A program made the position numbers and the translations under genes. Source: Schmidtea nova (taxonomy: Eukaryota). Taken from it: a stretch of DNA of 64,000 nt. Positions 13,845 to 46,361 of this stretch are shown here, piece after piece. Below the pieces are notes generated by a model. It searched no databases and was not told the DNA's origin. It was given only the letters and a program-made list of their open reading frames with translations. Location of the stretch: the NCBI GenBank assembly GCA_044892505.1, contig CM097882.1, forward strand, positions 460,660,001-460,724,000. Direction: 5' to 3'. Numbering within the stretch: position 1 is the first letter of the stretch; each line of letters opens with the position of its first letter.

Positions 13845-16759
13845 TTTTTATCTAAATTTTTTACGTTAGATTATAAGTGTATATATATATATATATATAT
13901 ATATAATGATTTTATTAAAAATATTTCAACTAAAATTATCGTATTACAGTATAATACAAGAAATTTAGAAAAATTCAAATTCAAAAGGTATTCCTTATTG
14001 TATTTTAAGTTGTATCAATAACTAAATTATTTACAAATAATGAGTTCGAATCTCAACTAAAATAACTAAAGCAATTACTTATCCTAAGAATAATTTTTTT
14101 TTAAGTACACGAATTCTTGGCTGAAATTTTTCAAGTGTAAATAAACACTTCATAAATGCTGTGTCGAAAATTCATGTACATATAAAAAAATATTACATCT
14201 TGTCAAAAAAAAGATATTAATTTCTGAAAAAGATAAGACTAAAGGTGAAAAACACGAGATATTAATAAAATAATTAGAGTAACTAAATGTCGATACTTTG
14301 CATAATTGCATAAATAATTGCATAATTGCATAAATAATTGCATAATTGAAAATATTAAAAAAATTAAATATTTTTAAAATCTATTTTATCAAAGATTAAC
14401 GCTCAAAAAGTATAATTATTGAAATATCTATTTCGTATAATGTATTAAAAGTATTTGCGAATTTCAGCCTAGTGAATTAAAACACTTTATACATAATTCT
14501 TGAAGTTTAATGACAAATATTAGAATTAATAATTAAATTTTAAAAAATTACTTACTATAATTTAAAATCATTTTTATTGATAATTTTAAACAAACGTCAT
14601 AATTTCTAATTTCATTATTTTTTTAAATTAAATGTTAAACAATTTTTTATGTGTTTTTTTCAATAATTTAATTTTTAATTATTTAACAAATGACAAATGT
14701 ATTATGAATTTTTGCAAGAAATTAGACTTTTTTTTGCAATATTTTAATTTTACATTTGAGACAAGAAAATATTGATATTGGTGGGTTGTTGATCGTCAAT
14801 ATGACCTTGACGTTGCTATGGCTCGTATCAACAACTCAACATACAAAACATTGAAATAACCATATTGTTACCCGTCACTATGTAACGTTGGTACTGTAAC
14901 AAGTGGGTGGGTATTCGCAATCAGTGAGCGTCGTCAATACGAAACTATGATTGACCGAATATCTCCTGGGTCCAAGAGCTACCGATAGAAGGTTTAATGC
15001 ACATTTTGTCCTTCCTATGCATTATTTGACTGCAGATATATATTTTAAATTAACCAAAAATGAAGTAATTTCGTCAATTGAAATTTATTAATTTGTCCCA
15101 ATCAATCATTATGCACGGTATTATCTAAATTCTCGGGAACTTTTGCACATTTACTCTATTCGTAAGCTCGTACTCAAACATATCATCGCCAACTCAATTC
15201 GGGGATCAATTATTCCTTCAGAAAATGCATATATATTTGGGAATATACAAATTTACCCTTATTTAGACCCAAGATTTTATTATTCTTGCGATTTTCTTAA
15301 ATTATTATGTCTTTTATATTTAAAATTCAAGTAAACTTTATTTATATCTTAATCCTATTGTCTATCTTGCTCTAAATTTATGATAGAATATTTATTAAAA
15401 TTTCAACATTTTAATTTTGAAATTTTGCCGAGGCCTTGGTAACGAAATTGATTTAGTAAAACTTCTCTAATTTGGTTTTAAGTCAAAATATTATAAAATT
15501 TCTCCTGAAATATCTTAATTAGTTTATAAAAATTATTGATCTTAAATGCAAAATTTTTAAACTGATTCTATTTATATAAATTCCTAGTATTTAGTCTTTT
15601 TTCTTTTCTCTTTTATTTTGTTTAAAAGAAAACATTAATCAACCTGATTGGTTGATTTCTTATATTATGGAATGACTTCATATAATAAGGATATTGATCG
15701 ATTATTTTCAAAAAAAGAAAAATTTGAATTTCTTTAATTTACATGTTCAAGTAAGAATTTTATTTCATTAATAATTTTCGTGAGTTACCGTTGTATTTTT
15801 AGGAAAAATCTAGCCTTTGGAATCAGTCCTTCTACCAACCTTTACATAACTGGAATTATTTATTTGCCAAACCTTGGAATTTTATATTTGATATTTTCGA
15901 TTGTTTCTTCTCTCTAATGGACTGCCAAATAAATTTTCAGTGTTACATTTTCCTCTTTTATTTTAGTGATTAAAGAATACGTGTCACCGATTCGTTTTTC
16001 AGATTTTAAGGCATTTTCATTATACATTAGGCGTTTCCCTCAATATGGGTTAAATTTTATGAATAATCTAATTAAAAAAAATATCGATTATCCATAATTT
16101 AAGAATCTAACGTGAAATTTGACTCATGAAGGGCTTTACGATATAGGCACCAAAGTGACAAACTGAGTTTTCATGAACAAGGTTTACAGTAATGTAGAAA
16201 ACTAGGAACAATGTGTTGCTAAATTTCTTTTAAAATTTTACTTGACGTTTAAATATTTCGGGTATCTCAGATATCAATTTTTTGCAATTTGTACTGTTAA
16301 AGTTGTCCGGTGATGTAAATTGATGATTGCATGAGATGGTTGGGAGTTATTCAGGACGTTGAGAGTATTGTGTTGAATGAGATGAGTTTGTTGGGCCAGC
16401 CAAATCGAGCAGCATCTGAAAATAATACACAATCAATAAAATAAATTAAATACAGAATAACAACAAAATAAATTACCAACACCAAAGCGTAACAAAATAG
16501 GCGGCAACATCTAAAAGAAATAAAATATTTTTCAAAACAACAAAAATCTTCAAAACTCACTCATGCGAAGCAGATAAAATTGGAATATGACAGCGCGTGG
16601 GCGGATGTCACCGAAGACCTAAAGCAAAATCAAATAAAAATTAAATCATACAAAAAATAAACTTACCGCATGATTAACCAAACAAATCGGCAAGTTAAGT
16701 TAGGCAGCAAAAAGCCGACAACATGAAAAATGAAGCAAACATACACACATACTCGATGC

Positions 16760-16900
16760 TGATTGGCTAACCAACAACACCGGTTGAGTATAAATACTGA
16801 AGTCAAATCAGTATTTGACAATGTTATTTTTACCAAGTGTAACTTGCAGTTGAGCACTGAGAACATTGTAAATCCAACTTGAAGGAGAAATAAAAGGTAA
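16760..16900 (+). promoter_or_regulatory. Candidate LTR promoter (ATTGG box, TATAAATA, Inr-like TCAGTA) followed by AATAAA and a 5-prime splice donor
   Basis: GATTGG at about 16761, TATAAATA at 16789-16796, TCAGTA at 16808-16813, AATAAA at about 16889-16894, AG|GTAATT with GT at 16897. Other TATA-like sites exist at 17836 and about 19629, so U3/R/U5 limits are not established. Confidence 0.4.
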
Positions 16901-17900
16901 TTGTTGTGTGTTAGATTTTTACTTTAAACCCTCATAATTATAATGGTTAACCATATTAAAATCCATAAGGTTTCCGGAGGCCTAACAGCCTGACGGATTC
17001 TCTGGCCTCTCAGCGCAACACAATCTTTCGGTTGTGAGGTGCTGATGCGGCGGGACCATAGGTGTATTAAATATTTGGAAAGCGGAAGGGGTTAAATGCA
17101 CATAGGGTATCGAGTAAGACCTAATGAACATGAACGAAATCAAGGTGGAAATGATCTAATATAAACGTTATGCATCACGATGATAGGGTATCGAGTATAA
17201 ACTGGTAGTCGTAAACGAGCGTAAAGTGAAGCCCGTTTTGTAGGGAGGATATATATCGTGGCGAAGTCTAGGCGAGGGATAGACGTGTAGAAAATAAAAT
17301 TGGTGTAGATGAATTAGATGACGACAAGGGTAGGTATATGTCGACATTAGCGCGTACGAGTTCGGGCATAGTGAACCTAGTATCAAGGGTTAAGTCAGTT
17401 GTGTTTAGTCGCCAGGATAGATGATAAATAAACTACAGGCATTGAGAACCGATAAAATGATGAACCCCAGTGAGTAAGGACCCCAGGAACTTGCAAGAAT
17501 TACCCGACATGGTATGATCATTACTAGTTAAATGAGGAAGTAATCGAAAACGACTGATGAGATTGGATGTGATTAAATAGCATTATCGATAAATAAAAAC
17601 TGTTAAAGTTGAGTGATTGAACCTGATTGTTGAAAATTAAGTATAATAGTGATCTGATTTATAAATGCAACCAATCGTGCGTAGCGGAATCGTCGAAAAT
17701 AAAACGCGTAGCACATTAACTTCAAGCTACCATCTAACACGACCCACGTCAAGTCCACAATGATTCCGGCAACAATCTAGAAGGTACCCCTCGGACCTAC
17801 AGACCTTAAAAATTTAAGACGGGTGGGTTGACTAATATAAATAGGCCCGTTATACCATAGAATCCATAGTTAACAAACAACCATCTTCTTTAGAAATACT

Positions 17901-18536
17901 ATGGTGAAACTAGAGAATCTCCAAAGGAAGTCGATGATCGCGCACCCGATAAAGATAGAGGACACCATCCTTCGTAAGAAACGGCGCACCCGCTCCGTCA
18001 TCCGACCAAATACGAACCCAAACATCAGAGGAGAGAACGAAGCACCTCGAAAGGTTGCAGAAGTATCACGTCGCCACCTACGACGGTGGATGAGGGCGCA
18101 CATGAGCTCGGCAGCTAGTACCCCAGCTTGTGCGTTCGGACTACAGTTGCGGTGGGAAGGAGACACCGATTGGGTACCCTCCTCGGATCATAGCAAGCCG
18201 GAGAATCCCCGATGGTTCTATCAATTCTGCGATGAGTTACAGCAACCCCGCTGGCTGCTAAGCACCGGAATGATGTCCGGAAAAGAGCTACATCAACTCG
18301 GATACACGCTGCTAGACAGGCCTCGGTGTGGCGACACTGGGGAAGTCTTCGTTTATTCAAACGCGCCAGGAAGCGTGTCCTTGGACCAACACCCCGAGCC
18401 CAAAGACCATCGTCTCTGGGAGGTATTCATCTTTCGGGACAAGTTAAGTTGGAGCCCCGCCCCGGAGTTCTATTACGAAAGTGGAATCCGTCGTGATGAG
18501 AACACGGCCGACCAGGAATTGCGACCCTTCATCTAA
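17901..18536 (+). CDS. LTR-encoded ORF-A, 211 aa, unknown function
   Basis: Intact ATG-to-stop ORF, identical in the other LTR. CTTTAG acceptor-like site 7 nt before the ATG and AATAAA at about 18585. Confidence 0.65.
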   Translation: MVKLENLQRKSMIAHPIKIEDTILRKKRRTRSVIRPNTNPNIRGENEAPRKVAEVSRRHLRRWMRAHMSSAASTPACAFGLQLRWEGDTDWVPSSDHSKPENPRWFYQFCDELQQPRWLLSTGMMSGKELHQLGYTLLDRPRCGDTGEVFVYSNAPGSVSLDQHPEPKDHRLWEVFIFRDKLSWSPAPEFYYESGIRRDENTADQELRPFI

Positions 18537-18728
18537 ATCGCAAGGAAATCGATCACTCGAAGGAATATTTGATGTGTATTAAAAATAAATGTATTCATTT
18601 TTTGGGTTTTGTTATGTCTTTGAATGTATGGAGCGATCTGAGAGCGAAACACCTGTTTGATAATAAAGATAGTGACTGGGAGAACAGACAAACCATACAT
18701 AACCCGATTAATTGTACATTTTACAGAT

Positions 18729-19292
18729 ATGAGTGAACACCCAACTAGGAACTACAAACAAGAGGCTAAAGAGCACAAAGTACGATCGCAAGTCCTAGAA
18801 AACCGCTTGCGACAGCTAAACGAAGAGCACCAGCGGATTAAAGACACGTGGTTCAACCCAGAGAGGGTTAAAACCATCCTGCAAGCCAGATACAGGGCGG
18901 AACGAACAATCGACGAGCAAGCTAGGGAGGTAGCAGCACTAAAGATGGAGCTGTCGAATTACTTGAGGGCATCAACCCAGGAATTTATCAACGAGCAATT
19001 ACGCCCAGTGATCAGGGCTAGCACTTTTAACCGATGGGTGAACTCAATATCGATGACAACAAGTACCCAAACGGAAATAGAAACCATCCCAATCACAACT
19101 ACCCCAACATCCCCAATAATTCAGGAAGGCTCGAAACGAACAAAGAGACGGAATCGCTTGGGAGCGAAAAAGCGTAGGGAGAGACGCGCGTATGCAGATC
19201 GCGTAGGAATAGAGGTAGACTTGCTCAGTGGTCTATCTGAGCAAGAACTACTAAATGTAATCCGACCCTCTGTATTATTAAACTATAAATAA
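18729..19292 (+). CDS. LTR-encoded ORF-B, 187 aa from the first ATG; coiled coil plus basic NLS-like C-terminus
   Basis: TTTTACAG acceptor 2 nt before ATG 18729. A diverged homologue at 59490-59630 is 28/46 aa identical over the C-terminus. Confidence 0.75.
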   Translation: MSEHPTRNYKQEAKEHKVRSQVLENRLRQLNEEHQRIKDTWFNPERVKTILQARYRAERTIDEQAREVAALKMELSNYLRASTQEFINEQLRPVIRASTFNRWVNSISMTTSTQTEIETIPITTTPTSPIIQEGSKRTKRRNRLGAKKRRERRAYADRVGIEVDLLSGLSEQELLNVIRPSVLLNYK

Positions 19293-19682
19293 ATGTATAA
19301 AATGAATGACTTGACTCGTCTTGTCTGTGTGTAGAATGTCTGAAAATTGAATGGGACTAAAACCCGGATTCGTTTAAACTGCAGATATCTAAAAAGTAAA
19401 TTACCCTAGGACAATAGAAAGGAGCATAAGTGGGACCGAAAGAAAGCCACAGACACCTTCTAACGGTAGTGGTGGACCCGTGAATAAACAAGGGAATAGT
19501 AGCCGAAAGGTTGCTCACCTGCCTTGTCATTTCACAACGTTGACACAGCACCAACATGATGAGTAGTTAGGGATACATCATGGGTGTCAGCGGGGAAATG
19601 TTTTTATGTTGGCGAGATCACCCTAACATATAAAATCCTAAGGATCTCAGTTGTCAATCCAACCAACACACCAGCATAAATT

Positions 19683-19700
19683 TGGGGGCTCAGCCGGGAT
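19683..19700 (+). promoter_or_regulatory. Primer-binding site complementary to the tRNA-Pro 3-prime end
   Basis: TGGGGGCTCAGCCGGGAT, 6 nt after the LTR end. 16/18 identical to the canonical tRNA-Pro PBS TGGGGGCTCGTCCGGGAT. Confidence 0.88.
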
Positions 19701-20230
19701 TAAATCGATCTTTGTGGGAAAAAGTGAATTCGATATCTGCGGACAGTTTAGAGCGCCTGAACCGGGATGAATTGAATTTAGCGAGGAAAGTAAAGTAAAT
19801 AATAGAGGGTTTGAGGGTCCTGAAGCAAAAATGAATCGGGTTGAAAAATAATAAATAAAAGTATGAGTGTAAAATAATGGGATTGATGAACGTAATGAAA
19901 ATATGCATGAGAATGAAAGTATGAATGATAATGGAATGAAGGTATGAGGATGAATGAAGCATGATGACTAGTATGTGGAGTAACAGTATGAAAAGTGATG
20001 AAAAGTATGCATGACGTAAGGTAAAAGTATGCGGAAAAGTGTGCATGAAAATGGTATGAGTGTGAACAACTAGCAATGATCATGTCGGGGCGACATTCAA
20101 GAACACGGGGGGACATACACGTAGTGACGCGAAACAGAACAACAGAAAGCGAACAGTAGGACTACCATAGAATAAGAATAAGAAATAATAAATAAAAATC
20201 GACAAAAATTAATGAGAATTCATTCAGGGG

Positions 20231-20689
20231 ATGGAGAACAAAATAAAAGAAATGCAAACGTTTTTCGAGACAAATAACGAGACAATGGAGATAACAATGA
20301 GAAAGTTAAGACGACTCGAGGCAGGAGGATATCACAAACCGACAAACAGCACAGAAAAAGCGGAAATGATGATGAGCATAAGTAAGAATAAGATAACAGT
20401 GGATACAGCAACACGATATCAGTGGTATAGAGAAAGATTAAACAACCCTGAGATGAATATCGAGTGCCACAGGCTAGAACAACAAATTGCAACCAGACAC
20501 GATGAGTGGATAAGAATAACAACCGAACATACGAGACAATATCTGACGTGGTACATCTGTGAAATGAATAAGATACAGATAATGTTGTTGCCGTGTGGGC
20601 ATTTCCGATTCTGTAATGAGTGTAAAATAAATGAACGATGTCCTATGTGCAACCTTCCCGTATCCGAGAAAATAACAGTGTACTTGTAA
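20231..20689 (+). CDS. Small protein with a C-terminal IAP-type RING finger (no BIR), upstream of gag
   Basis: WYICEMNKIQIMLLPCGHFRFCNECKINERCPMCNLPVSEKITVYL matches the C-terminal RING pattern C..C......F.PCGH...C..C.....CP.C plus hydrophobic tail. The first Cys is replaced by Trp. Confidence 0.75.
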   Translation: MENKIKEMQTFFETNNETMEITMRKLRRLEAGGYHKPTNSTEKAEMMMSISKNKITVDTATRYQWYRERLNNPEMNIECHRLEQQIATRHDEWIRITTEHTRQYLTWYICEMNKIQIMLLPCGHFRFCNECKINERCPMCNLPVSEKITVYL

Positions 20690-21390
20690 TAGAAATAAAG
20701 TTTTGAACAAGTGCAGTTGTTATTGAAATTATGAGGGTTTAATAAGGATTTGGTAAAAATGACCTAAGTAATAATGAGCTACTCACGAGTAGTCCGATAA
20801 GCACCCATTGGGGGGAACCAACTGATCAACTCACCCGAGATGTGTAGAAAGGGATCCAATCGCGGATATTGGAAAGCTCTTGTGATGTGATTGATCACCA
20901 CATCGTGCATCAGTGAACCAATGCGATCTTTTTATATATTTTGGTTGGGGTGAAAGGTAGGGACAACTCAACGAGGTTTAGGCGCGCGCAGAAAAAACTA
21001 TAAAAATAGGATGTTAAAACTGATCAGTAAGGAGAGAGAGAAAGCAATGAAATGAGTAAGATGAATAGCGAAACGTGGTATATGATGAAAGGCACGTAAT
21101 CAGCTCGCATAAGGTAAAATCAAGTAGAAAGGTTGACGAATCGATAATAGAATAAAGGGGTATAACAGAGGAACCGAGTAAATGGAAAACTCGAGGTTAA
21201 AGGAAATCCTTGAAAGAAAGGAAATGATAAAAGGGGTCCTGGAGAGAAAGGATTTGCCCATAGTTCTTGAAAGATAGAACTTAACGAAACGCGACAATAG
21301 ATTCTCCGAAGAAGCATAAGTGACCACTGGGAGGAACATCCCGAAGCAACACATGCAACCACTGAGAGATGATATTTCGAGTTTTCGTTC

Positions 21391-21932
21391 GTGAGCATAG
21401 GTCTCATAGTGAGCATAGGTCTCGTCATAAACATAACATCATAGTGAGCATAGGTCTCGTCGTAAACATAACACCCTAGTGAGCGTAGGTCTCGTCATAA
21501 AACACAACACCATAGTGAGCATAGTTCTCGTCCGTAAATATAAATCTTGTAGTGAGCAGAGTTCTCATCAATAAACGTAAGTTCTAACAGCGAACATAGT
21601 CCTCATCAGTGAGCGTAGTTCTCATCAATAAACATAGTCATCGTAGTGAGCGTAGTTCTCATCAGGAAGCATAATTCCTGTAGTCACCATCAGTGAGCAT
21701 AGTTCTCATCGGGGAACATAATCCCCGGAGCAAAGAGTTTCCATCAGTAAGCAAAACCCTCATAACAACCATGTTTTGCCAGTGAGCATAGTTCTCGTCA
21801 GTGAGCATAGTTCTCGTCAGTGAGCATAGTTCTCGTCAGTGAGCATAGTTCTCGTCATTGAGCATAGTTCTCGTCATTGAGCATAGTTCTCGTTAGTGAG
21901 CATAGTTCTCAGCGGTGAGCATAGTTCTCGTT
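21391..21932 (+). repeat. Tandem array of a 19-bp unit AGTGAGCATAGTTCTCGTC in the 5-prime leader
   Basis: Eight near-perfect copies at 21781-21932, preceded by many progressively degenerate copies. Confidence 0.9.
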
Positions 21933-22258
21933 CGAAATGGAATATTGAGTAAAAGCCCACGAGAAAGACGACGAAGTGAGGCAGATGAGGACTAAATTAC
22001 GTATAAAACTATCCGGATAGTGAAGATCAATAAGCGATAATGGAGATGAATAAGTGATAATGAGGATAAATGATGAATAGTGAAAATGAATAGCGAATAA
22101 TGAGGAATAAGGGTTGAAAGAAACCGAATTAATAACGAGAGAGTTGAAGGTGCGCACCTGGGTATTGATAAATGCGAGTAAGCTGATTATGTGGCCTAAC
22201 GACGTCAAAGTATGCATACAAGGAGGAGTAGAAAAGTAAAGTGAGTAAGTGAAGGGTG

Positions 22259-22720
22259 CTGACTGGAAAACCCAGCAGACCATGAGATTCGATGGGAATA
22301 AAATGAAACCGGTTTGTTAAGACGGGTAAAGTGGTAAAGACGCTAGCTGGAAAACACAGCAGGTCAATGATAACGATCAGGAAAGATCGAGATAACAAAA
22401 GTGAGTAATAATAAAGTGATAAAATTGAGGACGCTGACTGGAAGACCCAGCAGGTCAAAAGTGATGATCATCGGAGTAAAGAGCAGGTAAAAGTCGACAG
22501 TAAAGAGATAAAGGGTGGATAATAAGAGCGCTGACTGGAAAAACCCAGCAGGCTAATGAAACGACAAGTGAGGTCGAGAATAATGAAGCAGAAGTAAAAG
22601 GTGAGATTAAAAGCGCTGACTGGAAAACCCAGCAGGCTAATGAAATAATGAGTGAAGTTGAGAGAAACAGAGTTCGAGATAAAAGGTGAGATTAAGGGCG
22701 CTGATTGGAAAGCCCAACAG
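22259..22720 (+). repeat. Six spaced copies of a bulged-A hairpin (CTG-A-CTGG-loop-CCAG-CAG)
   Basis: Copies start at 22259, 22343, 22434, 22531, 22616 and 22701 (period about 85-97 bp). Variant copies keep base pairing. Confidence 0.85.
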
Positions 22721-23597
22721 GCCAACGAGAGACGTCAGTTGACTCAAAGGTGAGTAGAGATGAGAATTGAAATGAAGTAGTAAACGCAGTGTGAATAGGA
22801 AATAAAGCGAATAGTTGAGAAACAGAGTAGTCGACAGAAAAGGGGAAATTTGAACTCAGAGCCAGAGAAGCCTGAGAAAAGTAAAGGGGATAATAAGAGC
22901 GCTGAGCGACAAAGTAATTGGAGAACTGGGGAAAAGTAATTGGTGTATTTGATAATGAATAGATAATTGATGCGACTGCATAGATAATTTAAATAGACTT
23001 AAAATCAAGGGAAATGGGAAAAATGGGGATCTTCATGAATTATGACTACACCCGTGAGAGGGACGAGAAACACGATAACGGGGACGTATCGTGTAAGTGA
23101 TTATTTGTTTTAAGGAAACAAATCAATCAAGCAATTCAAAGCAATCTAGCAGTCAGAGCAATCAAAGGAAACAAATCAAAGAAGAAGCAAAGCAAAAGCG
23201 GAGTAGAAAATCAGTTGAGAATATAAGAAGTTGAGGAATAGACAAAATTGAGGGACGAGAAACAAGATCAGGTATAATACCAATCTTAACGGAAGCAGAA
23301 AGAAAAGCAGCAAAAAGGACAAGAACAGGTAATAAGCCTAAGCAACAAAAGAACAAACAAGTAGAGATCAGCGACAATTCGAGTAATAAAGAGAATCAAG
23401 AAGAAACCCCAGAGGATCCAGAAGTACGAAACGAAGTAGAAACGATAGACAGTGAACCAGTCAGTGAAAACATAACGAGAAGCGAATCAAGAGATAACGA
23501 AACAGAGAGTAGTGAAGAAGAAGAGTCGAATTCAGAAACAAGTGGTGAACTAGAAGCAAAGAAAACTAGTACAGTATTCCAAGACAGTGGAATCGGG

Positions 23598-38465: not shown

Positions 38466-38588
38466 AGGGTGGAATATGAGTGTAAATAATAGTGTAAAAA
38501 CCAATGCATAACCGTATACGTATGGGTATAAATATTATAAAACATAAAAACAGAAAAAGAGAATGATGTATATAATCTAGAAAAAACG

Positions 38589-38939
38589 ATGAACCAAGAA
38601 AATATCGAGATGTCAATGATGACAAGATGGAAAGTGCAATGTGACCTGCTAGCCAGAACAGTAAATGAATTACAGAGCCAGTTGACGGCCAAAACGCAAT
38701 TATTAACCGAGAGCTACAACTGTAATTTTGAAGCAATGAACAAAATCGAGACCCAACAAATGCAGATAAACGAATTACAGAACGAGAATCGAACATTAAA
38801 TGAAGTAAACAATTGGCAAGCAGAGGAAATTGACAGATTAGCGAGACATGAAGAGGAAGAGATACCAGATAGTTGGACGAGCTGGATTGTAAATGAGATA
38901 GACGTGTATCCAGAGCCAGATTCAACTGAGGATGTATAG
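38589..38939 (+). CDS. Small coiled-coil protein, unknown function
   Basis: Intact 116-aa ORF with heptad-like LARTVNELQSQL...QINELQNENRTL. Acceptor-like CTAG 8 nt before the ATG. Confidence 0.6.
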   Translation: MNQENIEMSMMTRWKVQCDLLARTVNELQSQLTAKTQLLTESYNCNFEAMNKIETQQMQINELQNENRTLNEVNNWQAEEIDRLARHEEEEIPDSWTSWIVNEIDVYPEPDSTEDV

Positions 38940-39031
38940 TGAATAAGCGGAAAACTGTGTAAATACGTGTAAATAAAGAACCAGAAAAAAAATCAAAAAT
39001 ATGGAGAAATTGATGTAAATATTGTTGTAGA

Positions 39032-40444
39032 ATGAGAGCAGAAAGTGAAGCAGACCACCAAGCAATCGAAATTCTAAGAAGAGAAAATCGACAATGGGGA
39101 GTAAATGTGACGTGTGTAAAGTGTAAAAATCTACTGTTAAAACCGAGGCAAACGGAATGTGGATGCAGGATGTGCACCAAGTGTATATTGCAAATAATCA
39201 GTGAAAGTGAGACAAGAAAGTGTCCAGAGTGTGACGATAAACTACTGATCAACGAGACGAAACCAGACAAAGCAATACAAAAGGAGATCTGGAAGATAAA
39301 AACAGAGTGTATAAACCAACCATGTGAATGGAAAGGACCAATAATTGAGTTAAGACAACATCTGGGAAAATGCGAAAACAAGAAAGCGATATGTGAAAAG
39401 TGTCAACAGACGATAACAATCAAGCAGTCGAAAAATCATAAGGATGAGTGCAAAGCAGAGATAATAGAGTGTCAATACTGCGAACAAAGAGAGACAAGAG
39501 AGATAATCGAAACAGAACATCTCAACGTAGCAGAAGAGAAAGTGTGCGGAAAATTCAGAGGAATTTGTCCAAGTAATTGCGGAGCCGGAGAAGAGATGAT
39601 GCTGAAAGAACATTGGGAACAATGCGAGTCAAGACCAAGAAAGTGCGTATGGAGTAAACAAGGATGTGCAGTAAAGAAAACGAGCAAAGAGATGAAAGAA
39701 CATTTAGAAACAGAGACGGTACAACACGCAGAGATGCTAACAGAAAATTTAAGCGGAATGGAGCAAACCATACAGAAACTGGGAAAGGAAATTGAATCTC
39801 AGAGGATAATGACGGAGTTATTACTGGGAACGAGAGAGCAATTCGAGCTCACCAGAGAGAAAATGATGGAGAAAATCAAGGTCATAGAGACGCTAGTAAG
39901 AGAAGTAAATGTACGACATCAAATGTGGGTACGAGATACAGAGGATATCGAGAATTTACCGGTCGCACCATACGTATGGAAAATCAAGAACTTCAACGAA
40001 AAGTTCGCAGCAGCAAAAGCAGGAAGTCAAGTGTCGGTAACAAGTCCACCATTCTATCTGTGGAAAAATGGATACAAAGTTCGAATGAGAATTTATCCAA
40101 ATGGAGATGGATCAGGAAAGGAAACGCATGTGTCATTATTCTTTGCGTTGTGTAAAGGTGGTTACGACGACATATTAGAATGGCCGCTAGAGACAAAGGC
40201 TATAATGAGAGTGAGAAACTCGAAAGAAACAATAGCGAGAGTATTCAAAATTGATGGTAAGCACGAAGCTTACAAAAGACCGACCACAGAATGTTCATTA
40301 GCGACTGGAGAACCAAAATTCATACCACACCAAACAATGTGGGAAATGTTGTACGACGACAACCTATACGTAGAGTTGGAGATCGAAAAGAAAACAAGTA
40401 CAACAGTGATGAACACGAAGTCAACGAAAGGATGGTTAGAGTAG
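39032..40444 (+). CDS. TRAF-family protein (RING, TRAF zinc fingers, coiled coil, MATH), intronless
   Basis: RING CVKC...CGCRMCTKC...CPEC; zinc fingers CINQPCEW...HLGKC. MATH domain YVWKIKNF...SPPFYLWKNGYKVRMRIYPNGDGSGKETHVSLFFALCKGGYDDILEWP. Confidence 0.92.
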   Translation: MRAESEADHQAIEILRRENRQWGVNVTCVKCKNLLLKPRQTECGCRMCTKCILQIISESETRKCPECDDKLLINETKPDKAIQKEIWKIKTECINQPCEWKGPIIELRQHLGKCENKKAICEKCQQTITIKQSKNHKDECKAEIIECQYCEQRETREIIETEHLNVAEEKVCGKFRGICPSNCGAGEEMMLKEHWEQCESRPRKCVWSKQGCAVKKTSKEMKEHLETETVQHAEMLTENLSGMEQTIQKLGKEIESQRIMTELLLGTREQFELTREKMMEKIKVIETLVREVNVRHQMWVRDTEDIENLPVAPYVWKIKNFNEKFAAAKAGSQVSVTSPPFYLWKNGYKVRMRIYPNGDGSGKETHVSLFFALCKGGYDDILEWPLETKAIMRVRNSKETIARVFKIDGKHEAYKRPTTECSLATGEPKFIPHQTMWEMLYDDNLYVELEIEKKTSTTVMNTKSTKGWLE

Positions 40445-40533: not shown

Positions 40534-41694
40534 ATGGAAAACGCAAATGAACAGGTAATCGAAGATGAAACGAGAAACGAGATGGCGAACGAACGAGAAG
40601 CAATAAAAAGAGAAATCGAAAGAAGATGTAAAGAGAAAGTAGAACAAAGAACCAGGGAATTACACGAAGTGATGACAAACAATTTCTACGAGAAACTGAA
40701 ATGCGAAAGACAAATGGAGTTATATCAGCTAGAACTCGAGGAAGTGAATAAAGAGATAGTACAACTGACAACACAAATAGAGAAGCTAAAAGGAATAAAT
40801 GTACGAAGTCGACAAAAGATAGAAGAGGTCTATCAGTTGATGAGGAAACAAGCAGAACATTATAAAAATATGATGAAAACGCGAAGAGAAGAGAGGGAGA
40901 AACAAGAGGAAAAGATGGAGGTAAAAATACTAGCAATCAAGGCTCAAGCGAGACATTGGAAAATGGAGTCGAAACGAGTGTATAAAGAAGCCAAAGAGAT
41001 AATCAGAAAGACAGCATACAGCGAAGATTGGAAACTGTATCAAGAGATAGACGAGTTGAAAGAAGAATTGGAACAGAGAAAGCGACAAGAACAAGCAAAC
41101 AAAGAATGGAGTCGAAAACGACAGCGATTTATTCGAGAACAGGCAAAGGAACTAAAGAAAACGCAATGGCAAATACAGACGATAAACGGAGAAATGCGAG
41201 GCATTAGACAGAAAGAGGAAGCTGAAAGACAAAAGTTGATCAGGGAAAAAGAAAGTCTGGAAAGAGATGTAAATGGCTACCAAGGAGTAGTGACTCAAAA
41301 GAAAATGGAATTGAAAGCAGTGAAAGAAAGACATGCGGAATCAAACCGAGCGTATGAGGAAAATATAACGAATTTGACGAAAGAAAACGAAGAACTGAAA
41401 CAGCAGATAATAACCCTGAAAGCAGAGAAAGAAACCATAGAAGTAGAAACCGAACCAACAGAAACAGAAGCCCTGAAGAGAAAAGTGGAAGAAATGGAAA
41501 GACAAATCGAAACTCTGAGCGAACAATCAGACTACATGGAGTATCTGTTAGATGAAGAGATACAAATCTCTCGAACGTATCAAGATGAAATTGCAATGTG
41601 GCGAAGCAGAGTGGTGTGGTTACCGTTTATACCACCACCACCAATGGAGCTCCAAGATGAAGGGTTCCATGAACCAGAGGAAACAGATGTGTAA
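40534..41694 (+). CDS. Long coiled-coil protein with a Pro-rich/acidic tail ending ETDV
   Basis: Intact 386-aa E/K/R/Q-rich heptad ORF. TTACAG acceptor-like site 1 nt before the ATG. Confidence 0.7.
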   Translation: MENANEQVIEDETRNEMANEREAIKREIERRCKEKVEQRTRELHEVMTNNFYEKLKCERQMELYQLELEEVNKEIVQLTTQIEKLKGINVRSRQKIEEVYQLMRKQAEHYKNMMKTRREEREKQEEKMEVKILAIKAQARHWKMESKRVYKEAKEIIRKTAYSEDWKLYQEIDELKEELEQRKRQEQANKEWSRKRQRFIREQAKELKKTQWQIQTINGEMRGIRQKEEAERQKLIREKESLERDVNGYQGVVTQKKMELKAVKERHAESNRAYEENITNLTKENEELKQQIITLKAEKETIEVETEPTETEALKRKVEEMERQIETLSEQSDYMEYLLDEEIQISRTYQDEIAMWRSRVVWLPFIPPPPMELQDEGFHEPEETDV

Positions 41695-41767: not shown

Positions 41768-42292
41768 ATGATCTGGCTCAAAACCCTACCAATCCTAACG
41801 ATTATGTTAACTACAACAATAATGAACTGCTCAACAACCGAAATCCAAAGAACCCTGTCAAATGAGATATCCCAGGAGATCGAAAAACAACTAAACGAAG
41901 TCAGAGGAGACTTGAAACAATTAATACGACAAATGCGAATCAGTCATGATCATCGCAAACCCTTACAAACCCTATTCAATCAAATCGAGAAGATCCGAGA
42001 AATCCATAAAACCTTTCAAGATCACCTAAAGCCAATCAAAGGGCAAACCCAAATCGAATCCGAAATCCGAAACAGATGGATCATCGTGGGAATAGTCACA
42101 ATGACAATACTGACAATCATCCTGATCATCGTGATTACGTATACCCTATATCGAATCAGAAGCCTCAAACAACAACAAACGATAATGTGTAGATGTGCTA
42201 AAAGAGAAGCAAAAACCCAACAAAGGATGAGAAGTCATCTACGACAAATCCAAGCCCGATACGAAATGCAGTCAACCAGTGAAAGGACCTGA
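41768..42292 (+). CDS. Small type-I membrane protein (signal peptide, coiled coil, TM, basic tail)
   Basis: N-terminal MIWLKTLPILTIMLTTTIMNCS; TM WIIVGIVTMTILTIILIIVITYTL followed by a basic tail. Confidence 0.7.
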   Translation: MIWLKTLPILTIMLTTTIMNCSTTEIQRTLSNEISQEIEKQLNEVRGDLKQLIRQMRISHDHRKPLQTLFNQIEKIREIHKTFQDHLKPIKGQTQIESEIRNRWIIVGIVTMTILTIILIIVITYTLYRIRSLKQQQTIMCRCAKREAKTQQRMRSHLRQIQARYEMQSTSERT

Positions 42293-42462: not shown

Positions 42463-42497
42463 AATTGCGGGACGCAATTTTAGGGGACCCCGAGTGA
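42463..42497 (+). promoter_or_regulatory. Pre-LTR hairpin plus polypurine-tract-like site
   Basis: AATTGCG-GGA-CGCAATT hairpin, then TTAGGGGACCCCGAGTGA directly abutting the 3-prime LTR TG. The purine tract is imperfect. Confidence 0.6.
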
Positions 42498-44009
42498 TGT
42501 TGGGCCAGCCAAATCGAGCAGCATCTGAAAATAATACACAATCAATAAAATAAATTAAATACAGAATAACAACAAAATAAATTACCAACACCAAAGCGTA
42601 ACAAAATAGGCGGCAACATCTAAAAGAAATAAAATATTAATCAAAACAACAAAAATCTTCAAAACTCACTCATGCGAAGCAGATAAAATTGGAATATGAC
42701 AGCGCGTGGGCGGATGTCACCGAAGACCTAAAGCAAAATCAAATAAAAATTAAATCATACAAAAAATAAACTTACCGCATGATTAACCAAACAAATCGGC
42801 AAGTTAAGTTAGGCAGCAAAAAGCCGACAACATGAAAAATGAAGCAAACATACACACATACTCGATGCTGATTGGCTAACCAACAACACCGGTTGAGTAT
42901 AAATACTGAAGTCAAATCAGTATTTGACAATGTTATTTTTACCAAGTGTAACTTGCAGTTGAGCACTGAGAACATTGTAAATCCAACTTGAAGGAGAAAT
43001 AAAAGGTAATTGTTGTGTGTTAGATTTTTACTTTAAACCCTCATAATTATAATGGTTAACCATATTAAAATCCATAAGGTTTCCGGAGGCCTAACAGCCT
43101 GACGGATTCTCTGGCCTCTCAGCGCAACACAATCTTTCGGTTGTGAGGTGCTGATGCGGCGGGACCATAGGTGTATTAAATATTTGGAAAGCGGAAGGGG
43201 TTAAATGCACATAGGGTATCGAGTAAGACCTAATGAACATGAACGAAATCAAGGTGGAAATGATCTAATATAAACGTTATGCATCACGATGATAGGGTAT
43301 CGAGTATAAACTGGTAGTCGTAAACGAGCGTAAAGTGAAGCCCGTTTTGTAGGGAGGATATATATCGTGGCGAAGTCTAGGCGAGGGATAGACGTGTAGA
43401 AAATAAAATTGGTGTAGATGAATTAGATGACGACAAGGGTAGGTATATGTCGACATTAGCGCGTACGAGTTCGGGCATAGTGAACCTAGTATCAAGGGTT
43501 AAGTCAGTTGTGTTTAGTCGCCAGGATAGATGATAAATAAACTACAGGCATTGAGAACCGATAAAATGATGAACCCCAGTGAGTAAGGACCCCAGGAACT
43601 TGCAAGAATTACCCGACATGGTATGATCATTACTAGTTAAATGAGGAAGTAATCGAAAACGACTGATGAGATTGGATGTGATTAAATAGCATTATCGATA
43701 AATAAAAACTGTTAAAGTTGAGTGATTGAACCTGATTGTTGAAAATTAAGTATAATAGTGATCTGATTTATAAATGCAACCAATCGTGCGTAGCGGAATC
43801 GTCGAAAATAAAACGCGTAGCACATTAACTTCAAGCTACCATCTAACACGACCCACGTCAAGTCCACAATGATTCCGGCAACAATCTAGAAGGTACCCCT
43901 CGGACCTACAGACCTTAAAAATTTAAGACGGGTGGGTTGACTAATATAAATAGGCCCGTTATACCATAGAATCCATAGTTAACAAACAACCATCTTCTTT
44001 AGAAATACT

Positions 44010-44645
44010 ATGGTGAAACTAGAGAATCTCCAAAGGAAGTCGATGATCGCGCACCCGATAAAGATAGAGGACACCATCCTTCGTAAGAAACGGCGCACCC
44101 GCTCCGTCATCCGACCAAATACGAACCCAAACATCAGAGGAGAGAACGAAGCACCTCGAAAGGTTGCAGAAGTATCACGTCGCCACCTACGACGGTGGAT
44201 GAGGGCGCACATGAGCTCGGCAGCTAGTACCCCAGCTTGTGCGTTCGGACTACAGTTGCGGTGGGAAGGAGACACCGATTGGGTACCCTCCTCGGATCAT
44301 AGCAAGCCGGAGAATCCCCGATGGTTCTATCAATTCTGCGATGAGTTACAGCAACCCCGCTGGCTGCTAAGCACCGGAATGATGTCCGGAAAAGAGCTAC
44401 ATCAACTCGGATACACGCTGCTAGACAGGCCTCGGTGTGGCGACACTGGGGAAGTCTTCGTTTATTCAAACGCGCCAGGAAGCGTGTCCTTGGACCAACA
44501 CCCCGAGCCCAAAGACCATCGTCTCTGGGAGGTATTCATCTTTCGGGACAAGTTAAGTTGGAGCCCCGCCCCGGAGTTCTATTACGAAAGTGGAATCCGT
44601 CGTGATGAGAACACGGCCGACCAGGAATTGCGACCCTTCATCTAA
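44010..44645 (+). CDS. LTR-encoded ORF-A (3-prime LTR copy)
   Basis: Protein identical to that of 17901-18536. Confidence 0.65.
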   Translation: MVKLENLQRKSMIAHPIKIEDTILRKKRRTRSVIRPNTNPNIRGENEAPRKVAEVSRRHLRRWMRAHMSSAASTPACAFGLQLRWEGDTDWVPSSDHSKPENPRWFYQFCDELQQPRWLLSTGMMSGKELHQLGYTLLDRPRCGDTGEVFVYSNAPGSVSLDQHPEPKDHRLWEVFIFRDKLSWSPAPEFYYESGIRRDENTADQELRPFI

Positions 44646-44837
44646 ATCGCAAGGAAATCGATCACTCGAAGGAATATTTGATGTGTATTAAAAATAAATG
44701 TATTCATTTTTTGGGTTTTGTTATGTCTTTGAATGTATGGAGCGATCTGAGAGCGAAACACCTGTTTGATAATAAAGATAGTGACTGGGAGAACAGACAA
44801 ACCATACATAACCCGATTAATTGTACATTTTACAGAT

Positions 44838-45401
44838 ATGAGTGAACACCCAACTAGGAACTACAAACAAGAGGCTAAAGAGCACAAAGTACGATCGCAA
44901 GTCCTAGAAAACCGCTTGCGACAGCTAAACGAAGAGCACCAGCGGATTAAAGCCACGTGGTTCAACCCAGAGAGGGTTAAAACCATCCTGCAAGCCAGAT
45001 ACAGGGCGGAACGAACAATCGACGAGCAAGCTAGGGAGGTAGCAGCACTAAAGATGGAGCTGTCGAATTACTTGAGGGCATCAACCCAGGAATTTATCAA
45101 CGAGCAATTACGCCCAGTGATCAGGGCTAGCACTTTTAACCGATGGGTGAACTCAATATCGATGACAACAAGTACCCAAACGGAAATAGAAACCATCCCA
45201 ATCACAACTACCCCAACATCCCCAATAATTCAGGAAGGCTCGAAACGAACAAAGAGACGGAATCGCTTGGGAGCGAAAAAGCGTAGGGAGAGACGCGCGT
45301 ATGCAGATCGCGTAGGAATAGAGGTAGACTTGCTCAGTGGTCTATCTGAGCAAGAACTACTAAATGTAATCCGACCCTCTGTATTATTAAACTATAAATA
45401 A
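44838..45401 (+). CDS. LTR-encoded ORF-B (3-prime LTR copy)
   Basis: One amino-acid difference from the 5-prime copy (IKDTW versus IKATW). Confidence 0.75.
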   Translation: MSEHPTRNYKQEAKEHKVRSQVLENRLRQLNEEHQRIKATWFNPERVKTILQARYRAERTIDEQAREVAALKMELSNYLRASTQEFINEQLRPVIRASTFNRWVNSISMTTSTQTEIETIPITTTPTSPIIQEGSKRTKRRNRLGAKKRRERRAYADRVGIEVDLLSGLSEQELLNVIRPSVLLNYK

Positions 45402-46361
45402 ATGTATAAAATGAATGACTTGACTCGTCTTGTCTGTGTGTAGAATGTCTGAAAATTGAATGGGACTAAAACCCGGATTCGTTTAAACTGCAGATATCTA
45501 AAAAGTAAATTACCCTAGGACAATAGAAAGGAGCATAAGTGGGACCGAAAGAAAGCCACAGACACCTTCTAACGGTAGTGGTGGACCCGTGAATAAACAA
45601 GGGAATAGTAGCCGAAAGGTTGCTCACCTGCCTTGTCATTTCACAACGTTGACACAGCACCAACATGATGAGTAGTTAGGGATACATCATGGGTGTCAGC
45701 GGGGAAATGTTTTTATGTTGGCGAGATCACCCTAACATATAAAATCCTAAGGATCTCAGTTGTACATCTAACCAACACACCAGCAAGTTGATGGAAATGT
45801 TATGGGTATCGGAGCTTCAGGAATGATGTAAGGAGTAAGGATAGTAAATCCGTTCGTGGTGTGCATGCGTATGATTGTATGTGATTACATGTAATTGTTT
45901 GTGTCTGTATGTTGACTTGAATGTTGGATGAAAATGAGTGAGATTTCTTTGGATGTATGATGTTAACTAACATGTCTGTGTGGAATTTTTGGTATGGTTT
46001 GCTTGTGTGTATATAATTGTTGTATGCTATTGAATGATACTGTGTATGTGTGTATATTGTATTTTATATGTATGTTGCTTGTGTATTAGTATGGAAGGTG
46101 CTATTGAATGAAATGGATGTAATTTTTTGCAAATAGGGATGCGTTATGATTTTGAGATATCGTGGGGGTAGTTATAGTATACTATATATAAATTATATAA
46201 AATATTTTTAGAATTAAAATAATAATAATAATTTTTATAATATCTTTTATAAATTTTAAATTTATAATTTTATGAAAGTAATATAATAATAAAATTTCTA
46301 ATTTTTATAATATTCATTTTTAAATTCAAATTTTTATATTTTAAGAATATATATATATATA

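What the first reader, a model, noticed from the sequence alone, without database searches (positions are those of the whole stretch)
16389..45785. A 29.4-kb, recently inserted, enveloped Ty3/Gypsy element with a virus-like accessory genome
Seen: TG..CA LTRs of 3,288 bp differing at about six sites spotted by eye, an AGTT TSD, a tRNA-Pro PBS, a 22.8-kb interior and at least eight non-gag/pol ORFs or modules. Established: typical Ty3/Gypsy elements are about 5-10 kb; only a few giants (plant Ogre, planarian Burro) approach this size. Inference: this is a complex, virus-like retroelement that combines an envelope with a large set of captured cell-death and immune-signalling modules, and it may be an undescribed lineage.
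Basis: partly seen in the sequence, partly recalled or inferred. Interest (0 to 1): 0.95.

Follow-up and report, generated by a model that had tools for sequence, protein, structure and literature searches.

The report
Giant enveloped Burro-type gypsy provirus
This is a real, almost intact 29.4-kb retrovirus-like element whose envelope gene is fused into its gag-pol polyprotein and which carries TRAF-, IAP-RING-, ankyrin- and probably Bcl-2-like accessory modules, but it matches the already described 'Burro' giant gypsy elements of planarian flatworms and is not a new kind of element.

Summary
Two 3,288-bp TG..CA LTRs differ at exactly 6 sites, an AGTT duplication flanks them, and the 22.8-kb interior is 80% covered by same-strand ORFs.

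- **Polyprotein:** one reading frame of 3,592 codons encodes gag (three CCHC knuckles), a 1,300-residue region of unknown function, a probable Bcl-2-like domain, env, PR, RT, RNase H and IN. It is interrupted once, by an in-frame stop.
- **Envelope:** the protein has an internal signal sequence and a membrane anchor. It matches Pfam Monjiviricetes_fusion (E 2e-67). Its model (pLDDT 87) resembles chuvirus glycoproteins and herpesvirus gB, so it is a class III fusogen.
- **Polymerase:** RT-RH-IN is closest to Ty3.
- **Accessory ORFs:** an IAP-type RING, an ankyrin protein, a full TRAF (RING, zinc fingers, MATH), three ORFs with no homologue found, and two ORFs inside each LTR.
- **Relatives:** at least 17 database polyproteins share the gag-env-PR order.

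The literature already describes this layout for Burro/GYPSM1 elements of Schmidtea and related planarians. The flanks (about 74% A+T) fit such a host. "Undescribed lineage" is therefore not supported as a kind. I could not test whether this is a new family or one already named. A six-copy hairpin array in the leader is the main extra observation.

The parts
16385..16388 (.). 5' copy of the 4-bp target-site duplication (AGTT)
   Evidence: Read directly.
16389..19676 (+). 5' LTR, 3,288 bp, TG..CA. Inferred layout: long U3, TATA-like box at 19284, last AATAAA at 19483, short R and U5.
   Evidence: The U3/R/U5 split is inferred from motif positions only.
17901..18536 (+). LTR ORF a, 211 aa. Repeated at 44010-44645 in the 3' LTR. 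G+C 54%, basic N-terminus, no family match.
   Evidence: The product is identical in both LTRs.
18657..19292 (+). LTR ORF b, 211 codons. Repeated at 44766-45401. Coiled-coil-like with an arginine/lysine-rich stretch, no family match.
   Evidence: One amino-acid difference between the two LTR copies.
19683..19701 (+). Primer-binding-site-like stretch beginning TGG, 6 nt after the LTR
   Evidence: tRNA identity not tested.
19677..23597 (+). 3.9-kb leader between the 5' LTR and gag
20231..20689 (+). 152-aa ORF with a C-terminal IAP-type RING finger and no BIR domain
   Evidence: Pfam zf-C3HC4_3 E 5.6e-8. Best PDB matches are the RINGs of cIAP2, XIAP, cIAP1 and livin, E about 1e-4.
21391..21931 (+). 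Tandem arrays in the leader (35-bp units, then 8-11 copies of a 19-bp unit)
22255..22724 (+). Array of six similar hairpins spaced 84-97 nt. Each has 10 bp, two bulges and an A-rich loop.
   Evidence: 96.7% of cells pair, and 4 of 10 pairs show compensatory changes.
23598..34376 (+). Polyprotein gene gag-X-(Bcl-2-like)-env-PR-RT-RNase H-IN. One frame of 3,592 codons, broken once by an in-frame stop in the pol part. No frameshift.
   Evidence: Relatives read through collinearly in one ORF.
24315..24467 (+). Three CCHC zinc knuckles at the end of gag
   Evidence: Pfam zf-CCHC E 4e-11. A pattern search found three CX2CX4HX4C motifs.
24498..28064 (+). Region X, about 1,190 residues. Charged and partly coiled-coil, with no detectable homology.
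   Evidence: all negative.
28065..28457 (+). Probable Bcl-2-like helical domain directly upstream of the env signal sequence
   Evidence: Weak chain of evidence. Not significant by any single test.
28485..30323 (+). env: internal signal-like hydrophobic stretch, a 560-residue class III ectodomain and a membrane anchor
   Evidence: Pfam PF24664 E 2e-67. Model pLDDT 86.6. Foldseek: gB E 7e-14 and chuvirus glycoproteins E 4e-38. TM segment.
30882..31154 (+). Retroviral-type aspartic protease
   Evidence: Pfam RVP E 5e-9.
31760..32870 (+). Reverse transcriptase and RNase H (approximate start)
   Evidence: Pfam RVT_1 E 2e-32 and RT_RNaseH E 9e-39. Ty3 RT 4ol8 E 3e-69.
33195..33767 (+). Integrase: H2C2 zinc domain and catalytic core
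   Evidence: Pfam Integrase_H2C2 E 2e-21 and rve E 2e-11. Ty3 Gag-Pol 7q5b E 1e-98.
34485..38465 (+). 1,326-aa ORF. N-terminal ankyrin repeats (about 34506-34943). The rest is unknown, with three hydrophobic segments, one near the C-terminus.
38589..38939 (+). 116-aa coiled-coil-like ORF. Coding status uncertain.
39032..40444 (+). 470-aa TRAF-like protein: RING, TRAF zinc fingers, coiled coil, MATH/TRAF-C
   Evidence: Pfam MATH_2 E 6.5e-27. PDB TRAF5/3/1/2 MATH E 4e-27 and TRAF6 RING-zinc fingers E 1e-12. Named TRAF2/TRAF4 hits at 24-26% identity.
40534..41694 (+). 386-aa coiled-coil ORF with no family match
41768..42292 (+). 174-aa ORF with a hydrophobic N-terminus and one membrane-spanning segment. 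No family match.
42482..42497 (+). Short, weak polypurine-like stretch abutting the 3' LTR
   Evidence: Read directly, weak.
42498..45785 (+). 3' LTR, 3,288 bp
45786..45789 (.). 3' copy of the target-site duplication (AGTT)

Best explanation
This is a young, nearly intact endogenous provirus of the Burro type. Burro elements are giant Ty3/gypsy-like (errantivirus-like) LTR elements described from dugesiid planarians. The host here is an AT-rich animal genome, most likely a planarian.

Shown:
- It has LTR-retroelement anatomy.
- One 3,592-codon frame carries gag, a class III chuvirus/gB-type envelope protein with its own internal signal sequence and membrane anchor, PR, RT, RNase H and IN.
- It also has separate ORFs for an IAP-type RING protein, an ankyrin protein and a TRAF homologue.

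Inferred:
- Transcription starts near the end of a long U3.
- The full-length RNA is translated into the polyprotein. The internal signal sequence puts the env ectodomain into the ER lumen, while gag and PR-pol stay on the cytosolic side. Signal peptidase and the element's protease then separate the parts.
- The env trimer lets particles enter other cells.
- The ORFs downstream of pol, and those in U3, are made from spliced RNAs.
- The TRAF-, RING-, ankyrin- and Bcl-2-like proteins tamper with the host's ubiquitin, NF-kB-type and cell-death signalling to keep the producing cell alive.
- The hairpin array in the leader is a cis-acting RNA signal.
For: - Anatomy and age: (99.8% LTR identity, TSD). 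Composition is uniform and A-rich across the whole interior, accessory ORFs included, and unlike the host exons.
- Ty3/gypsy identity: the order is PR-RT-RH-IN. The best solved relative is Ty3 Gag-Pol (E 1e-98), far ahead of the retroviral enzymes.
- Envelope.
- Embedding of env is a family trait. Every long relative scanned has env upstream of PR in one ORF. Of 17 long relatives, 16 keep a signal-like stretch before the ectodomain and 15 keep an anchor after it.
- Match to the published Burro description (PMC6431247): three CCHC knuckles; in-frame env with mononegavirus-type hits; a Bcl-2-like segment next to env; MATH/TRAF, ankyrin and RING motifs; tandem repeats; interior up to 25 kb.
- Host fit: planarian genomes are more than 70% A+T and carry Burro elements over 30 kb (PMC11410931). 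The flanks here are about 74% A+T.
- Decay: about one new stop is expected in the ORFs since insertion, and one is seen.
Against: - No Burro reference sequence could be compared, so family membership rests on architecture and literature.
- The host species was not identified.
- The nearest database proteins are unnamed and only 32-50% identical.
- Three motifs reported for Burro1 were not detected: BIR, SUMO-like and dUTPase-like.
- TRAF is an ORF downstream of pol here. In Burro1 it lies inside the polyprotein, and in the Dugesia tigrina element it is an upstream ORF.
- The polyprotein has 3,592 codons, against the reported 4,873 and 5,140.
- The Bcl-2-like call is weak (model pLDDT 55, Foldseek E 0.2).
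- Expression, splicing, processing and every accessory function are inferred.
Confidence: 0.78

Rival explanations
1. It is a distinct, undescribed lineage of giant enveloped gypsy-like proviruses. On this reading it resembles Burro only in general plan and may live in a different host group.
For: - Its env and PR are at most 42% identical, and RT-RH-IN at most 50% identical, to anything in two very large protein collections.
- Gene layout differs from the two Burro elements described in text. The accessory cassette lies 3' of pol, there are ORFs in U3, and the polyprotein is shorter (against PMC6431247).
- GAG-ENV-POL elements are polyphyletic and also occur in nematodes and bryozoans (PMC13524379).
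Against: - The specific combination matches Burro closely: three CCHC knuckles, a Bcl-2-like segment abutting env, TRAF, ankyrin and IAP-type RING, tandem repeats, about 30 kb, and a very AT-rich host.
- Burro-2, -3 and -4 are named but not described in the text available, so the layout differences may be differences between families.
- The protein collections appear to lack this genome altogether. There were no self-hits. Low identity therefore says little.
Confidence: 0.17
2. The 22.8-kb interior is a composite: nested independent insertions, host genes trapped between two LTRs, or an assembly mis-join.
For: - The size is unusual.
- The accessory ORFs have no counterpart in the relatives' polyproteins.
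- Copies elsewhere in the genome were not examined.
Against: - There are no N runs in the element.
- The interior has no further long direct repeats and no inverted repeats.
- All ORFs of 150 aa or more with any family match lie on one strand and are tightly packed. Gaps between ORFs downstream of pol are 74-109 nt, apart from one 566-nt gap that holds the 116-aa ORF.
- The long antisense ORFs have no family match, as expected on a T-rich antisense strand.
- G+C, A-richness and third-position usage are uniform from the leader to the 3' LTR and unlike the host exons.
- A relative carries ankyrin repeats inside its polyprotein. The literature reports the same modules either as ORFs or as polyprotein subdomains in Burro.
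Confidence: 0.04

Closest known systems
Burro elements (Burro-1 to -4; Burro1 = GYPSM1) of Schmidtea mediterranea and Burro-like elements of other Dugesiidae (Jurka 2007; Grohme et al. 2018; Arkhipova & Yushenova 2019, PMC6431247)
   Same: - Giant gypsy-like LTR element of about 30 kb.
- Gag with three CCHC knuckles.
- env in frame between gag and pol, with mononegavirus-type glycoprotein similarity.
- Bcl-2-like motif next to env.
- MATH/TRAF, ankyrin, RING and coiled-coil motifs.
- Tandem repeats.
- Very AT-rich host genome.
   Different: - TRAF is a separate ORF downstream of pol.
- No BIR, SUMO-like or dUTPase-like motif was detected.
- The polyprotein has 3,592 codons, against 4,873 and 5,140.
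- There are two ORFs inside the LTR.
GAG-ENV-POL 'ancient errantiviruses' with HSV/gB-type ENV in Platyhelminthes, Nematoda and Bryozoa (Chary & Hayashi 2026, PMC13524379)
   Same: - Ty3/gypsy pol.
- Class III gB-type env placed between gag and pol.
- Multiple conserved cysteines.
- Evidence of recent insertion.
   Different: - Those elements were annotated as three ORFs of ordinary size.
- Here env is fused into one polyprotein frame, and the element carries about 10 kb of accessory coding sequence.
Insect errantiviruses (gypsy, ZAM, Idefix)
   Same: Ty3/gypsy-type LTR elements with an envelope gene. They spread between cells of the host.
   Different: - Their env is a separate ORF downstream of pol and is of the baculovirus/paramyxovirus F type, not class III.
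- They are 7-9 kb with no accessory cassette (figures from general knowledge and PMC13524379).
Mosquito BEL/Pao elements with chuvirus-like glycoproteins (Dezordi et al. 2020, as cited in PMC13524379)
   Same: An LTR retroelement that carries a Jingchuvirales-type class III glycoprotein.
   Different: - They belong to a different retroelement superfamily (BEL/Pao).
- Their env is not embedded in the polyprotein.
- They are of ordinary size.
Complex retroviruses and foamy-like fish ERVs with accessory ORFs (up to 17 kb; PMC6431247)
   Same: Accessory genes lie downstream of pol/env and reach into U3. Expression is presumably by splicing.
   Different: They belong to the Retroviridae and have retroviral env. 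This element's RT-RH-IN is far closer to Ty3 than to retroviral enzymes.

Membership tests
Ty3/gypsy (Metaviridae) LTR retroelements | Direct LTRs ending TG..CA, flanked by a short (4-6 bp) target-site duplication | tested here: met
Ty3/gypsy (Metaviridae) LTR retroelements | pol domain order PR-RT-RNase H-IN | tested here: met
   (domain coordinates along one frame).
Ty3/gypsy (Metaviridae) LTR retroelements | RT-RH-IN closer to Ty3/gypsy than to Retroviridae, Caulimoviridae or others | tested here: met
   Ty3 Gag-Pol E 1e-98, caulimovirus polyprotein E 5e-48, retroviral RT/IN E 1e-27 or weaker. No tree was built.
Ty3/gypsy (Metaviridae) LTR retroelements | tRNA primer-binding site next to the 5' LTR and a polypurine tract next to the 3' LTR | tested here: inconclusive
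   A stretch beginning TGG lies 6 nt after the LTR. tRNA identity could not be tested. The polypurine stretch is short and weak.
Burro-type giant gypsy elements of planarians | Interior of about 20-25 kb and total of about 30 kb or more | tested here: met
   22,821-bp interior and 29,397 bp in total. This is just under the published '>30 kb'.
Burro-type giant gypsy elements of planarians | [quoted passage not shown] | tested here: met
   Three knuckles. The Retrotrans_gag Pfam model itself did not match.
Burro-type giant gypsy elements of planarians | env in frame between gag and PR, similar to mononegavirus-type fusion glycoproteins | tested here: met
Burro-type giant gypsy elements of planarians | Bcl-2-like motif immediately upstream of env | tested here: inconclusive
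   - No Pfam match in this element.
- The segment aligns (E 4e-4 and 9e-5) to the pre-env segments of two relatives. One of these has a sub-threshold Pfam Bcl-2 match.
- The model is low-confidence (pLDDT 55). All listed PDB matches are Bcl-2-family proteins, but at E 0.2-0.7.
Burro-type giant gypsy elements of planarians | MATH/TRAF, ankyrin and RING motifs, in the polyprotein or in accessory ORFs | tested here: met
Burro-type giant gypsy elements of planarians | BIR, SUMO-like and dUTPase-like motifs (reported for Burro1) | tested here: not met
   None found at E up to 1 in any ORF or polyprotein segment. The literature does not state that these are required in all Burro families.
Burro-type giant gypsy elements of planarians | Host is a dugesiid planarian | not testable with these tools
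   Flank composition fits. A look-up of a flanking host ORF found nothing on record.
Burro-type giant gypsy elements of planarians | Sequence similarity to, or phylogenetic nesting with, the Burro-1 to -4/GYPSM1 references | not tested
   No reference sequence was available through the tools.
GAG-ENV-POL errantivirus-like elements with gB-type ENV | Class III (gB-like) fold of ENV with conserved cysteines | tested here: met
   Thirteen cysteine columns are at least 90% conserved across 70 relatives and all are present here.
Retroviridae | Retroviral-type RT/IN and env | tested here: not met
   Retroviral enzymes are distant matches only. The env is class III and of negative-strand-RNA-virus type.

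The most novel reading that the evidence does not exclude
This copy may represent a Burro-like family that has not been described. Its layout resembles a complex retrovirus:
- an accessory-gene cassette 3' of pol that runs into a 2.9-kb U3;
- an upstream IAP-RING ORF;
- a six-hairpin cis element in the leader.

It is so little decayed (one stop, 0.18% LTR divergence) that sister copies in the same genome may still be complete. It would then belong to a much wider, unnamed clade of elements with env embedded in the polyprotein. That clade shows up as at least 17 representative clusters in environmental assemblies.
Probability: 0.25. Interest if true: 0.6.

Novelty: new member of a known kind. 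Interest (0 to 1): 0.4.

Why it matters
Burro-type elements are the largest LTR retroelements known. They are the only group reported to translate a viral fusion protein from inside the gag-pol polyprotein.

- **A clean specimen.** A nearly intact, gap-free copy is useful for working out how one polyprotein can feed both the secretory pathway and the cytosol.
- **Which modules travel with the element.** It helps show which cell-death and signalling modules are carried along.
- **Source of the envelope.** It bears on whether the envelope came from chuvirus-like RNA viruses. The structural comparison here supports a class III chuvirus/gB-type envelope. It does not support the F-type (gypsy Env) homology suggested in 2019.
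- **A wider clade.** The same gag-env-PR fusion occurs in many unnamed environmental sequences.

None of this changes the basic picture already in the literature.

Tried and rejected
**Searches that found nothing**
- tRNA search of the window, to check the tRNA-Pro primer claim: no tRNA genes.
- Rfam at gathering threshold on the whole window, and at E up to 1 on 8000-23600: no matches.
- Host identification by exact look-up of the flanking RING ORF: not on record.
- Names or sources for the closest relatives: all are unnamed ENA proteins.
- Region X (about 1,190 residues): no Pfam, PDB or relative match.
- The ankyrin ORF beyond its first 150 residues, the 386-aa and 174-aa ORFs and both LTR ORFs: no family, and no similarity to any fetched relative.
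- The env piece against PDB by sequence: nothing. Only the fold comparison worked.
- Supplementary tables that might list Burro primers or element coordinates: not held. The Grohme et al. 2018 paper is not held either.

**Other**
- My first structure string for the leader hairpin was off by one column and gave 42% pairing. The corrected register gave 96.7%.

**Readings rejected**
- Long antisense ORFs (38335-39381 and 23396-24193, minus strand) as genes: they have no family match and lie on the T-rich antisense strand.
- A class I (F-type) envelope: rejected.

Full report
**1. Observation**

The two LTRs are at 16389-19676 and 42498-45785. Each is 3,288 bp, and they align without gaps with 6 mismatches: 1 transition and 5 transversions. 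Both begin TG and end CA, and AGTT flanks both ends. The interior is 22,821 bp and contains no N run. The four N runs of the window all lie in the flanks and were left untouched.

The element stands out from its surroundings. It is about 40% G+C with 40% A on the + strand. The flanks are about 25-27% G+C with no strand skew.

A stretch beginning TGG lies 6 nt after the 5' LTR. Its assignment to tRNA-Pro could not be tested, because the window has no tRNA gene and no eukaryotic tRNA set was to hand. The polypurine stretch before the 3' LTR is short.

**2. Coding content**

ORFs of 150 aa or more on the + strand cover 80% of the interior.

*Polyprotein.* The main gene is a single frame from 23598 to 34376, 3,592 codons long. 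In order it carries:
- a gag region, distantly similar to the gag of relatives (about 25% identity);
- three CCHC knuckles;
- about 1,190 residues with no detectable homology;
- a helical segment that is probably Bcl-2-like;
- an envelope protein;
- a retroviral aspartic protease, RT, RNase H and integrase.

The frame is interrupted once by an in-frame stop in the pol part, and there is no frameshift. In four relatives the polyprotein reads collinearly through the corresponding point in one ORF. I therefore count this as one break, or possibly a read-through site, and I give no position.

From the LTR divergence I expect about 21 substitutions in the interior since insertion, and about one new stop across all ORFs. 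One is seen. The inserted copy was therefore probably complete.

*Other ORFs.*
- A 152-aa ORF in the leader has an IAP-type RING.
- A 1,326-aa ORF has N-terminal ankyrin repeats and three hydrophobic segments.
- A 116-aa ORF is coiled-coil-like.
- A 470-aa ORF is a complete TRAF homologue with RING, TRAF zinc fingers, coiled coil and MATH. Its PDB matches are TRAF5/3/1/2 at E 4e-27 and the TRAF6 RING-zinc fingers at E 1e-12.
- A 386-aa ORF is coiled-coil.
- A 174-aa ORF has a hydrophobic N-terminus and one membrane span.
- Two 211-codon ORFs lie in each LTR and are intact in both.

**3. The envelope**

The env segment matches Pfam PF24664 (Monjiviricetes_fusion) over nearly the whole model, E 2e-67. 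An alignment with 69 relatives shows 13 cysteine columns conserved in at least 90% of sequences, all present here.

An AlphaFold2 model built on that alignment has mean pLDDT 86.6. Against the PDB, its best matches are herpesvirus glycoprotein B structures (E 7e-14, probability 1.0). Against predicted viral structures, the best are glycoproteins of chuviruses and chu-like viruses, for example Tacheng tick virus 4 at E 4e-38 and TM 0.61. It is therefore a class III fusion protein of the negative-strand-RNA-virus type.

This agrees with the 'HSV/gB-type' label that PMC13524379 uses for flatworm elements. It does not agree with the gypsy-Env (F-type) homology suggested from HHpred in PMC6431247.

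A hydrophobic, signal-like stretch directly precedes the ectodomain, and a strong membrane anchor follows it.

**4. Relatives**

Two very large protein collections contain no copy of this protein. The closest matches are unnamed ENA proteins: 32-42% identical in env and PR, and 46-50% identical in RT-RH-IN.

Seventeen long relatives (1,251-4,844 aa) align to env. Every one that I scanned has env upstream of PR, and of RT-RH-IN where those are present, in a single ORF. Sixteen of the 17 keep the signal-like stretch and 15 keep the anchor. One relative of 4,844 aa has ankyrin repeats inside the polyprotein. Another has a sub-threshold Pfam Bcl-2 match immediately upstream of env.

After these come about a hundred stand-alone glycoproteins of 640-700 aa at 20-28% identity. 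These are the free viral type.

The fusion of env into gag-pol is thus an inherited family trait. It is not an accident of this copy.

**5. The Bcl-2-like segment**

- Pfam finds nothing in this element's pre-env segment.
- About 65-75 residues of it align to the pre-env segments of two relatives (E 4e-4 and 9e-5). In one of these, that same stretch carries the weak Bcl-2 match.
- A model of the segment is all-helical but of low confidence (pLDDT 55).
- All of the roughly 40 PDB matches listed are Bcl-2-family proteins (Bcl-xL, Bak, Bcl-2, A1, BFL1), but at E 0.2-0.7.

I rate the call probable, not shown.

**6. Classification**

The domain order PR-RT-RH-IN, the 4-bp duplication and the match to Ty3 Gag-Pol place the element in Ty3/gypsy. 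That match is E 1e-98 and collinear over 780 residues, far ahead of retroviral enzymes.

The specific architecture is the one published for Burro/GYPSM1 elements of Schmidtea mediterranea and other Dugesiidae (PMC6431247):
- interior up to 25 kb;
- gag with three CCHC knuckles;
- env in frame between gag and pol, next to a BCL2-like motif;
- MATH_TRAF, ankyrin, RING and coiled-coil (Smc) motifs;
- tandem repeats;
- accessory modules that occur either as ORFs or as polyprotein subdomains.

PMC13524379 reports the GAG-ENV-POL order with gB-type ENV in flatworms, nematodes and bryozoans. Planarian genomes are more than 70% A+T and carry Burro elements over 30 kb (PMC11410931), which matches the flanks here.

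There are differences from the two elements described in text:
- TRAF lies downstream of pol.
- BIR, SUMO-like and dUTPase-like motifs were not detected.
- The polyprotein is shorter.

Burro-2 to -4 are named but not described in what I could read.

I could not compare sequences with any Burro reference, and I could not identify the host. I therefore file the element as a new member of a known kind. It may well simply be a copy of a family that is already catalogued.

**7. How it most likely works**

Shown:
- the LTR anatomy, the domain set, the env fold and the conserved embedding of env.

Inferred:
- The LTR has three TATAAATA motifs. The last is at 19284, just after the second LTR ORF. The last AATAAA is at 19483. 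This suggests a U3 of about 2.9 kb that contains both LTR ORFs, and short R and U5 regions. The LTR ORFs would then be 3'-terminal genes of the transcripts.
- The full-length RNA would give the polyprotein. The internal signal sequence would send the ectodomain into the ER lumen, with gag and PR-pol on the cytosolic side. Signal peptidase and the protease would separate them.
- The ORFs downstream of pol, tightly packed and on one strand, would need spliced RNAs.
- By analogy with viral Bcl-2, IAP and ankyrin proteins, the TRAF-like, IAP-RING, ankyrin and Bcl-2-like products would interfere with host ubiquitin, TRAF/NF-kB-type and cell-death signalling.
- All accessory ORFs share the element's codon composition (third-position A 0.38-0.52, T 0.11-0.19). 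Host exons have third-position T of 0.39-0.50. The modules are therefore long-resident, not recent captures. LTR ORF a is the one outlier, at 54% G+C.
- BURRO1 RNA rises in differentiated cells when the PIWI protein SMEDWI-2 is depleted (PMC8532177). This fits an element that uses an envelope to pass between cells. That link is inference.

**8. Leader**

The 3.9-kb leader holds 35-bp and 19-bp tandem arrays. It also holds six copies of a small hairpin at 22255-22724. A search with the 22-nt motif found 5 of the 6 at up to 3 mismatches, against 0 expected by chance. The region folds better than all 100 shuffles, with a z-score of -4.0.

On the six aligned copies, 96.7% of cells pair and 4 of 10 pairs carry compensatory double changes. 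At most 2 of 500 shuffles reach those values, and shifted registers fall to 13-45% pairing. I read this as a cis-acting RNA signal for packaging, export or protein binding. Its function is unknown.

**9. Age**

LTR divergence is 0.18%. If I assume 1e-9 to 1e-8 substitutions per site per year, the insertion is roughly 0.1-0.9 million years old. That range is an assumption, since no rate is known for this host. Five of the six differences are transversions, so some may be assembly errors and the copy may be younger.

Noticed in passing
window 22255-22724 (+), in the element's leader: Six copies of a small hairpin (10 bp, two bulges, A-rich loop), spaced 84-97 nt. Four of the ten pairs show compensatory changes. 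Probably a cis-acting RNA element; function unknown.
   Followed up: yes
window 21391-21931 (+), in the element's leader: 35-bp tandem units, followed by 8-11 copies of a 19-bp tandem unit. No function assigned.
   Followed up: partly
window 17901-18536 and 18657-19292 (repeated at 44010-44645 and 44766-45401): Two 211-codon ORFs inside each LTR, intact in both LTRs. The first has 54% G+C, the highest of any ORF in the element. The second has an arginine/lysine-rich stretch. Neither matches any family.
   Followed up: partly
window 16389-19676 against 42498-45785: Five of the six LTR differences are transversions. That is unusual for point mutation, so some may be assembly errors.
   Followed up: no
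window 13479-13844 (-) and 9596-9895 (-): Exons of a host PP2C-type phosphatase gene, about 2.5 kb from the element. The first matches Pfam PP2C and starts with MG. An N run (13284-13475) interrupts the region. The exons were scanned separately and not joined.
   Followed up: partly
window 10701-13118 (+): An 805-codon ORF with a reverse-transcriptase domain (Pfam RVT_1, E 1e-7). By eye it also has a C-terminal GIY-YIG-like motif, which would make it a Penelope-like retroelement. It lies between the two PP2C exons.
   Followed up: partly
window 5162-5407 (+) and 7405-7638 (-): A fragment with a CENP-B/pogo-type DNA-binding domain (Pfam E 2e-11). Nearby is a short ORF that looks like the end of a Tc1/mariner transposase; that ORF had no family match.
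   Followed up: partly
window 61891-63474 (+): A 527-codon AT-rich ORF with RING-finger matches, presumably a host gene. An exact look-up found nothing on record.
   Followed up: partly
window 58012-58376: A 151-bp tandem repeat, 2.4 copies, in the right flank.
   Followed up: no
proteins P0003, P0004, P0006, P0007 (relatives): Their polyproteins continue for 600-900 residues beyond the integrase. This extension is cysteine-rich and ends in a membrane span. Several relatives also carry two to four protease-like domains. This element has neither feature.
   Followed up: no
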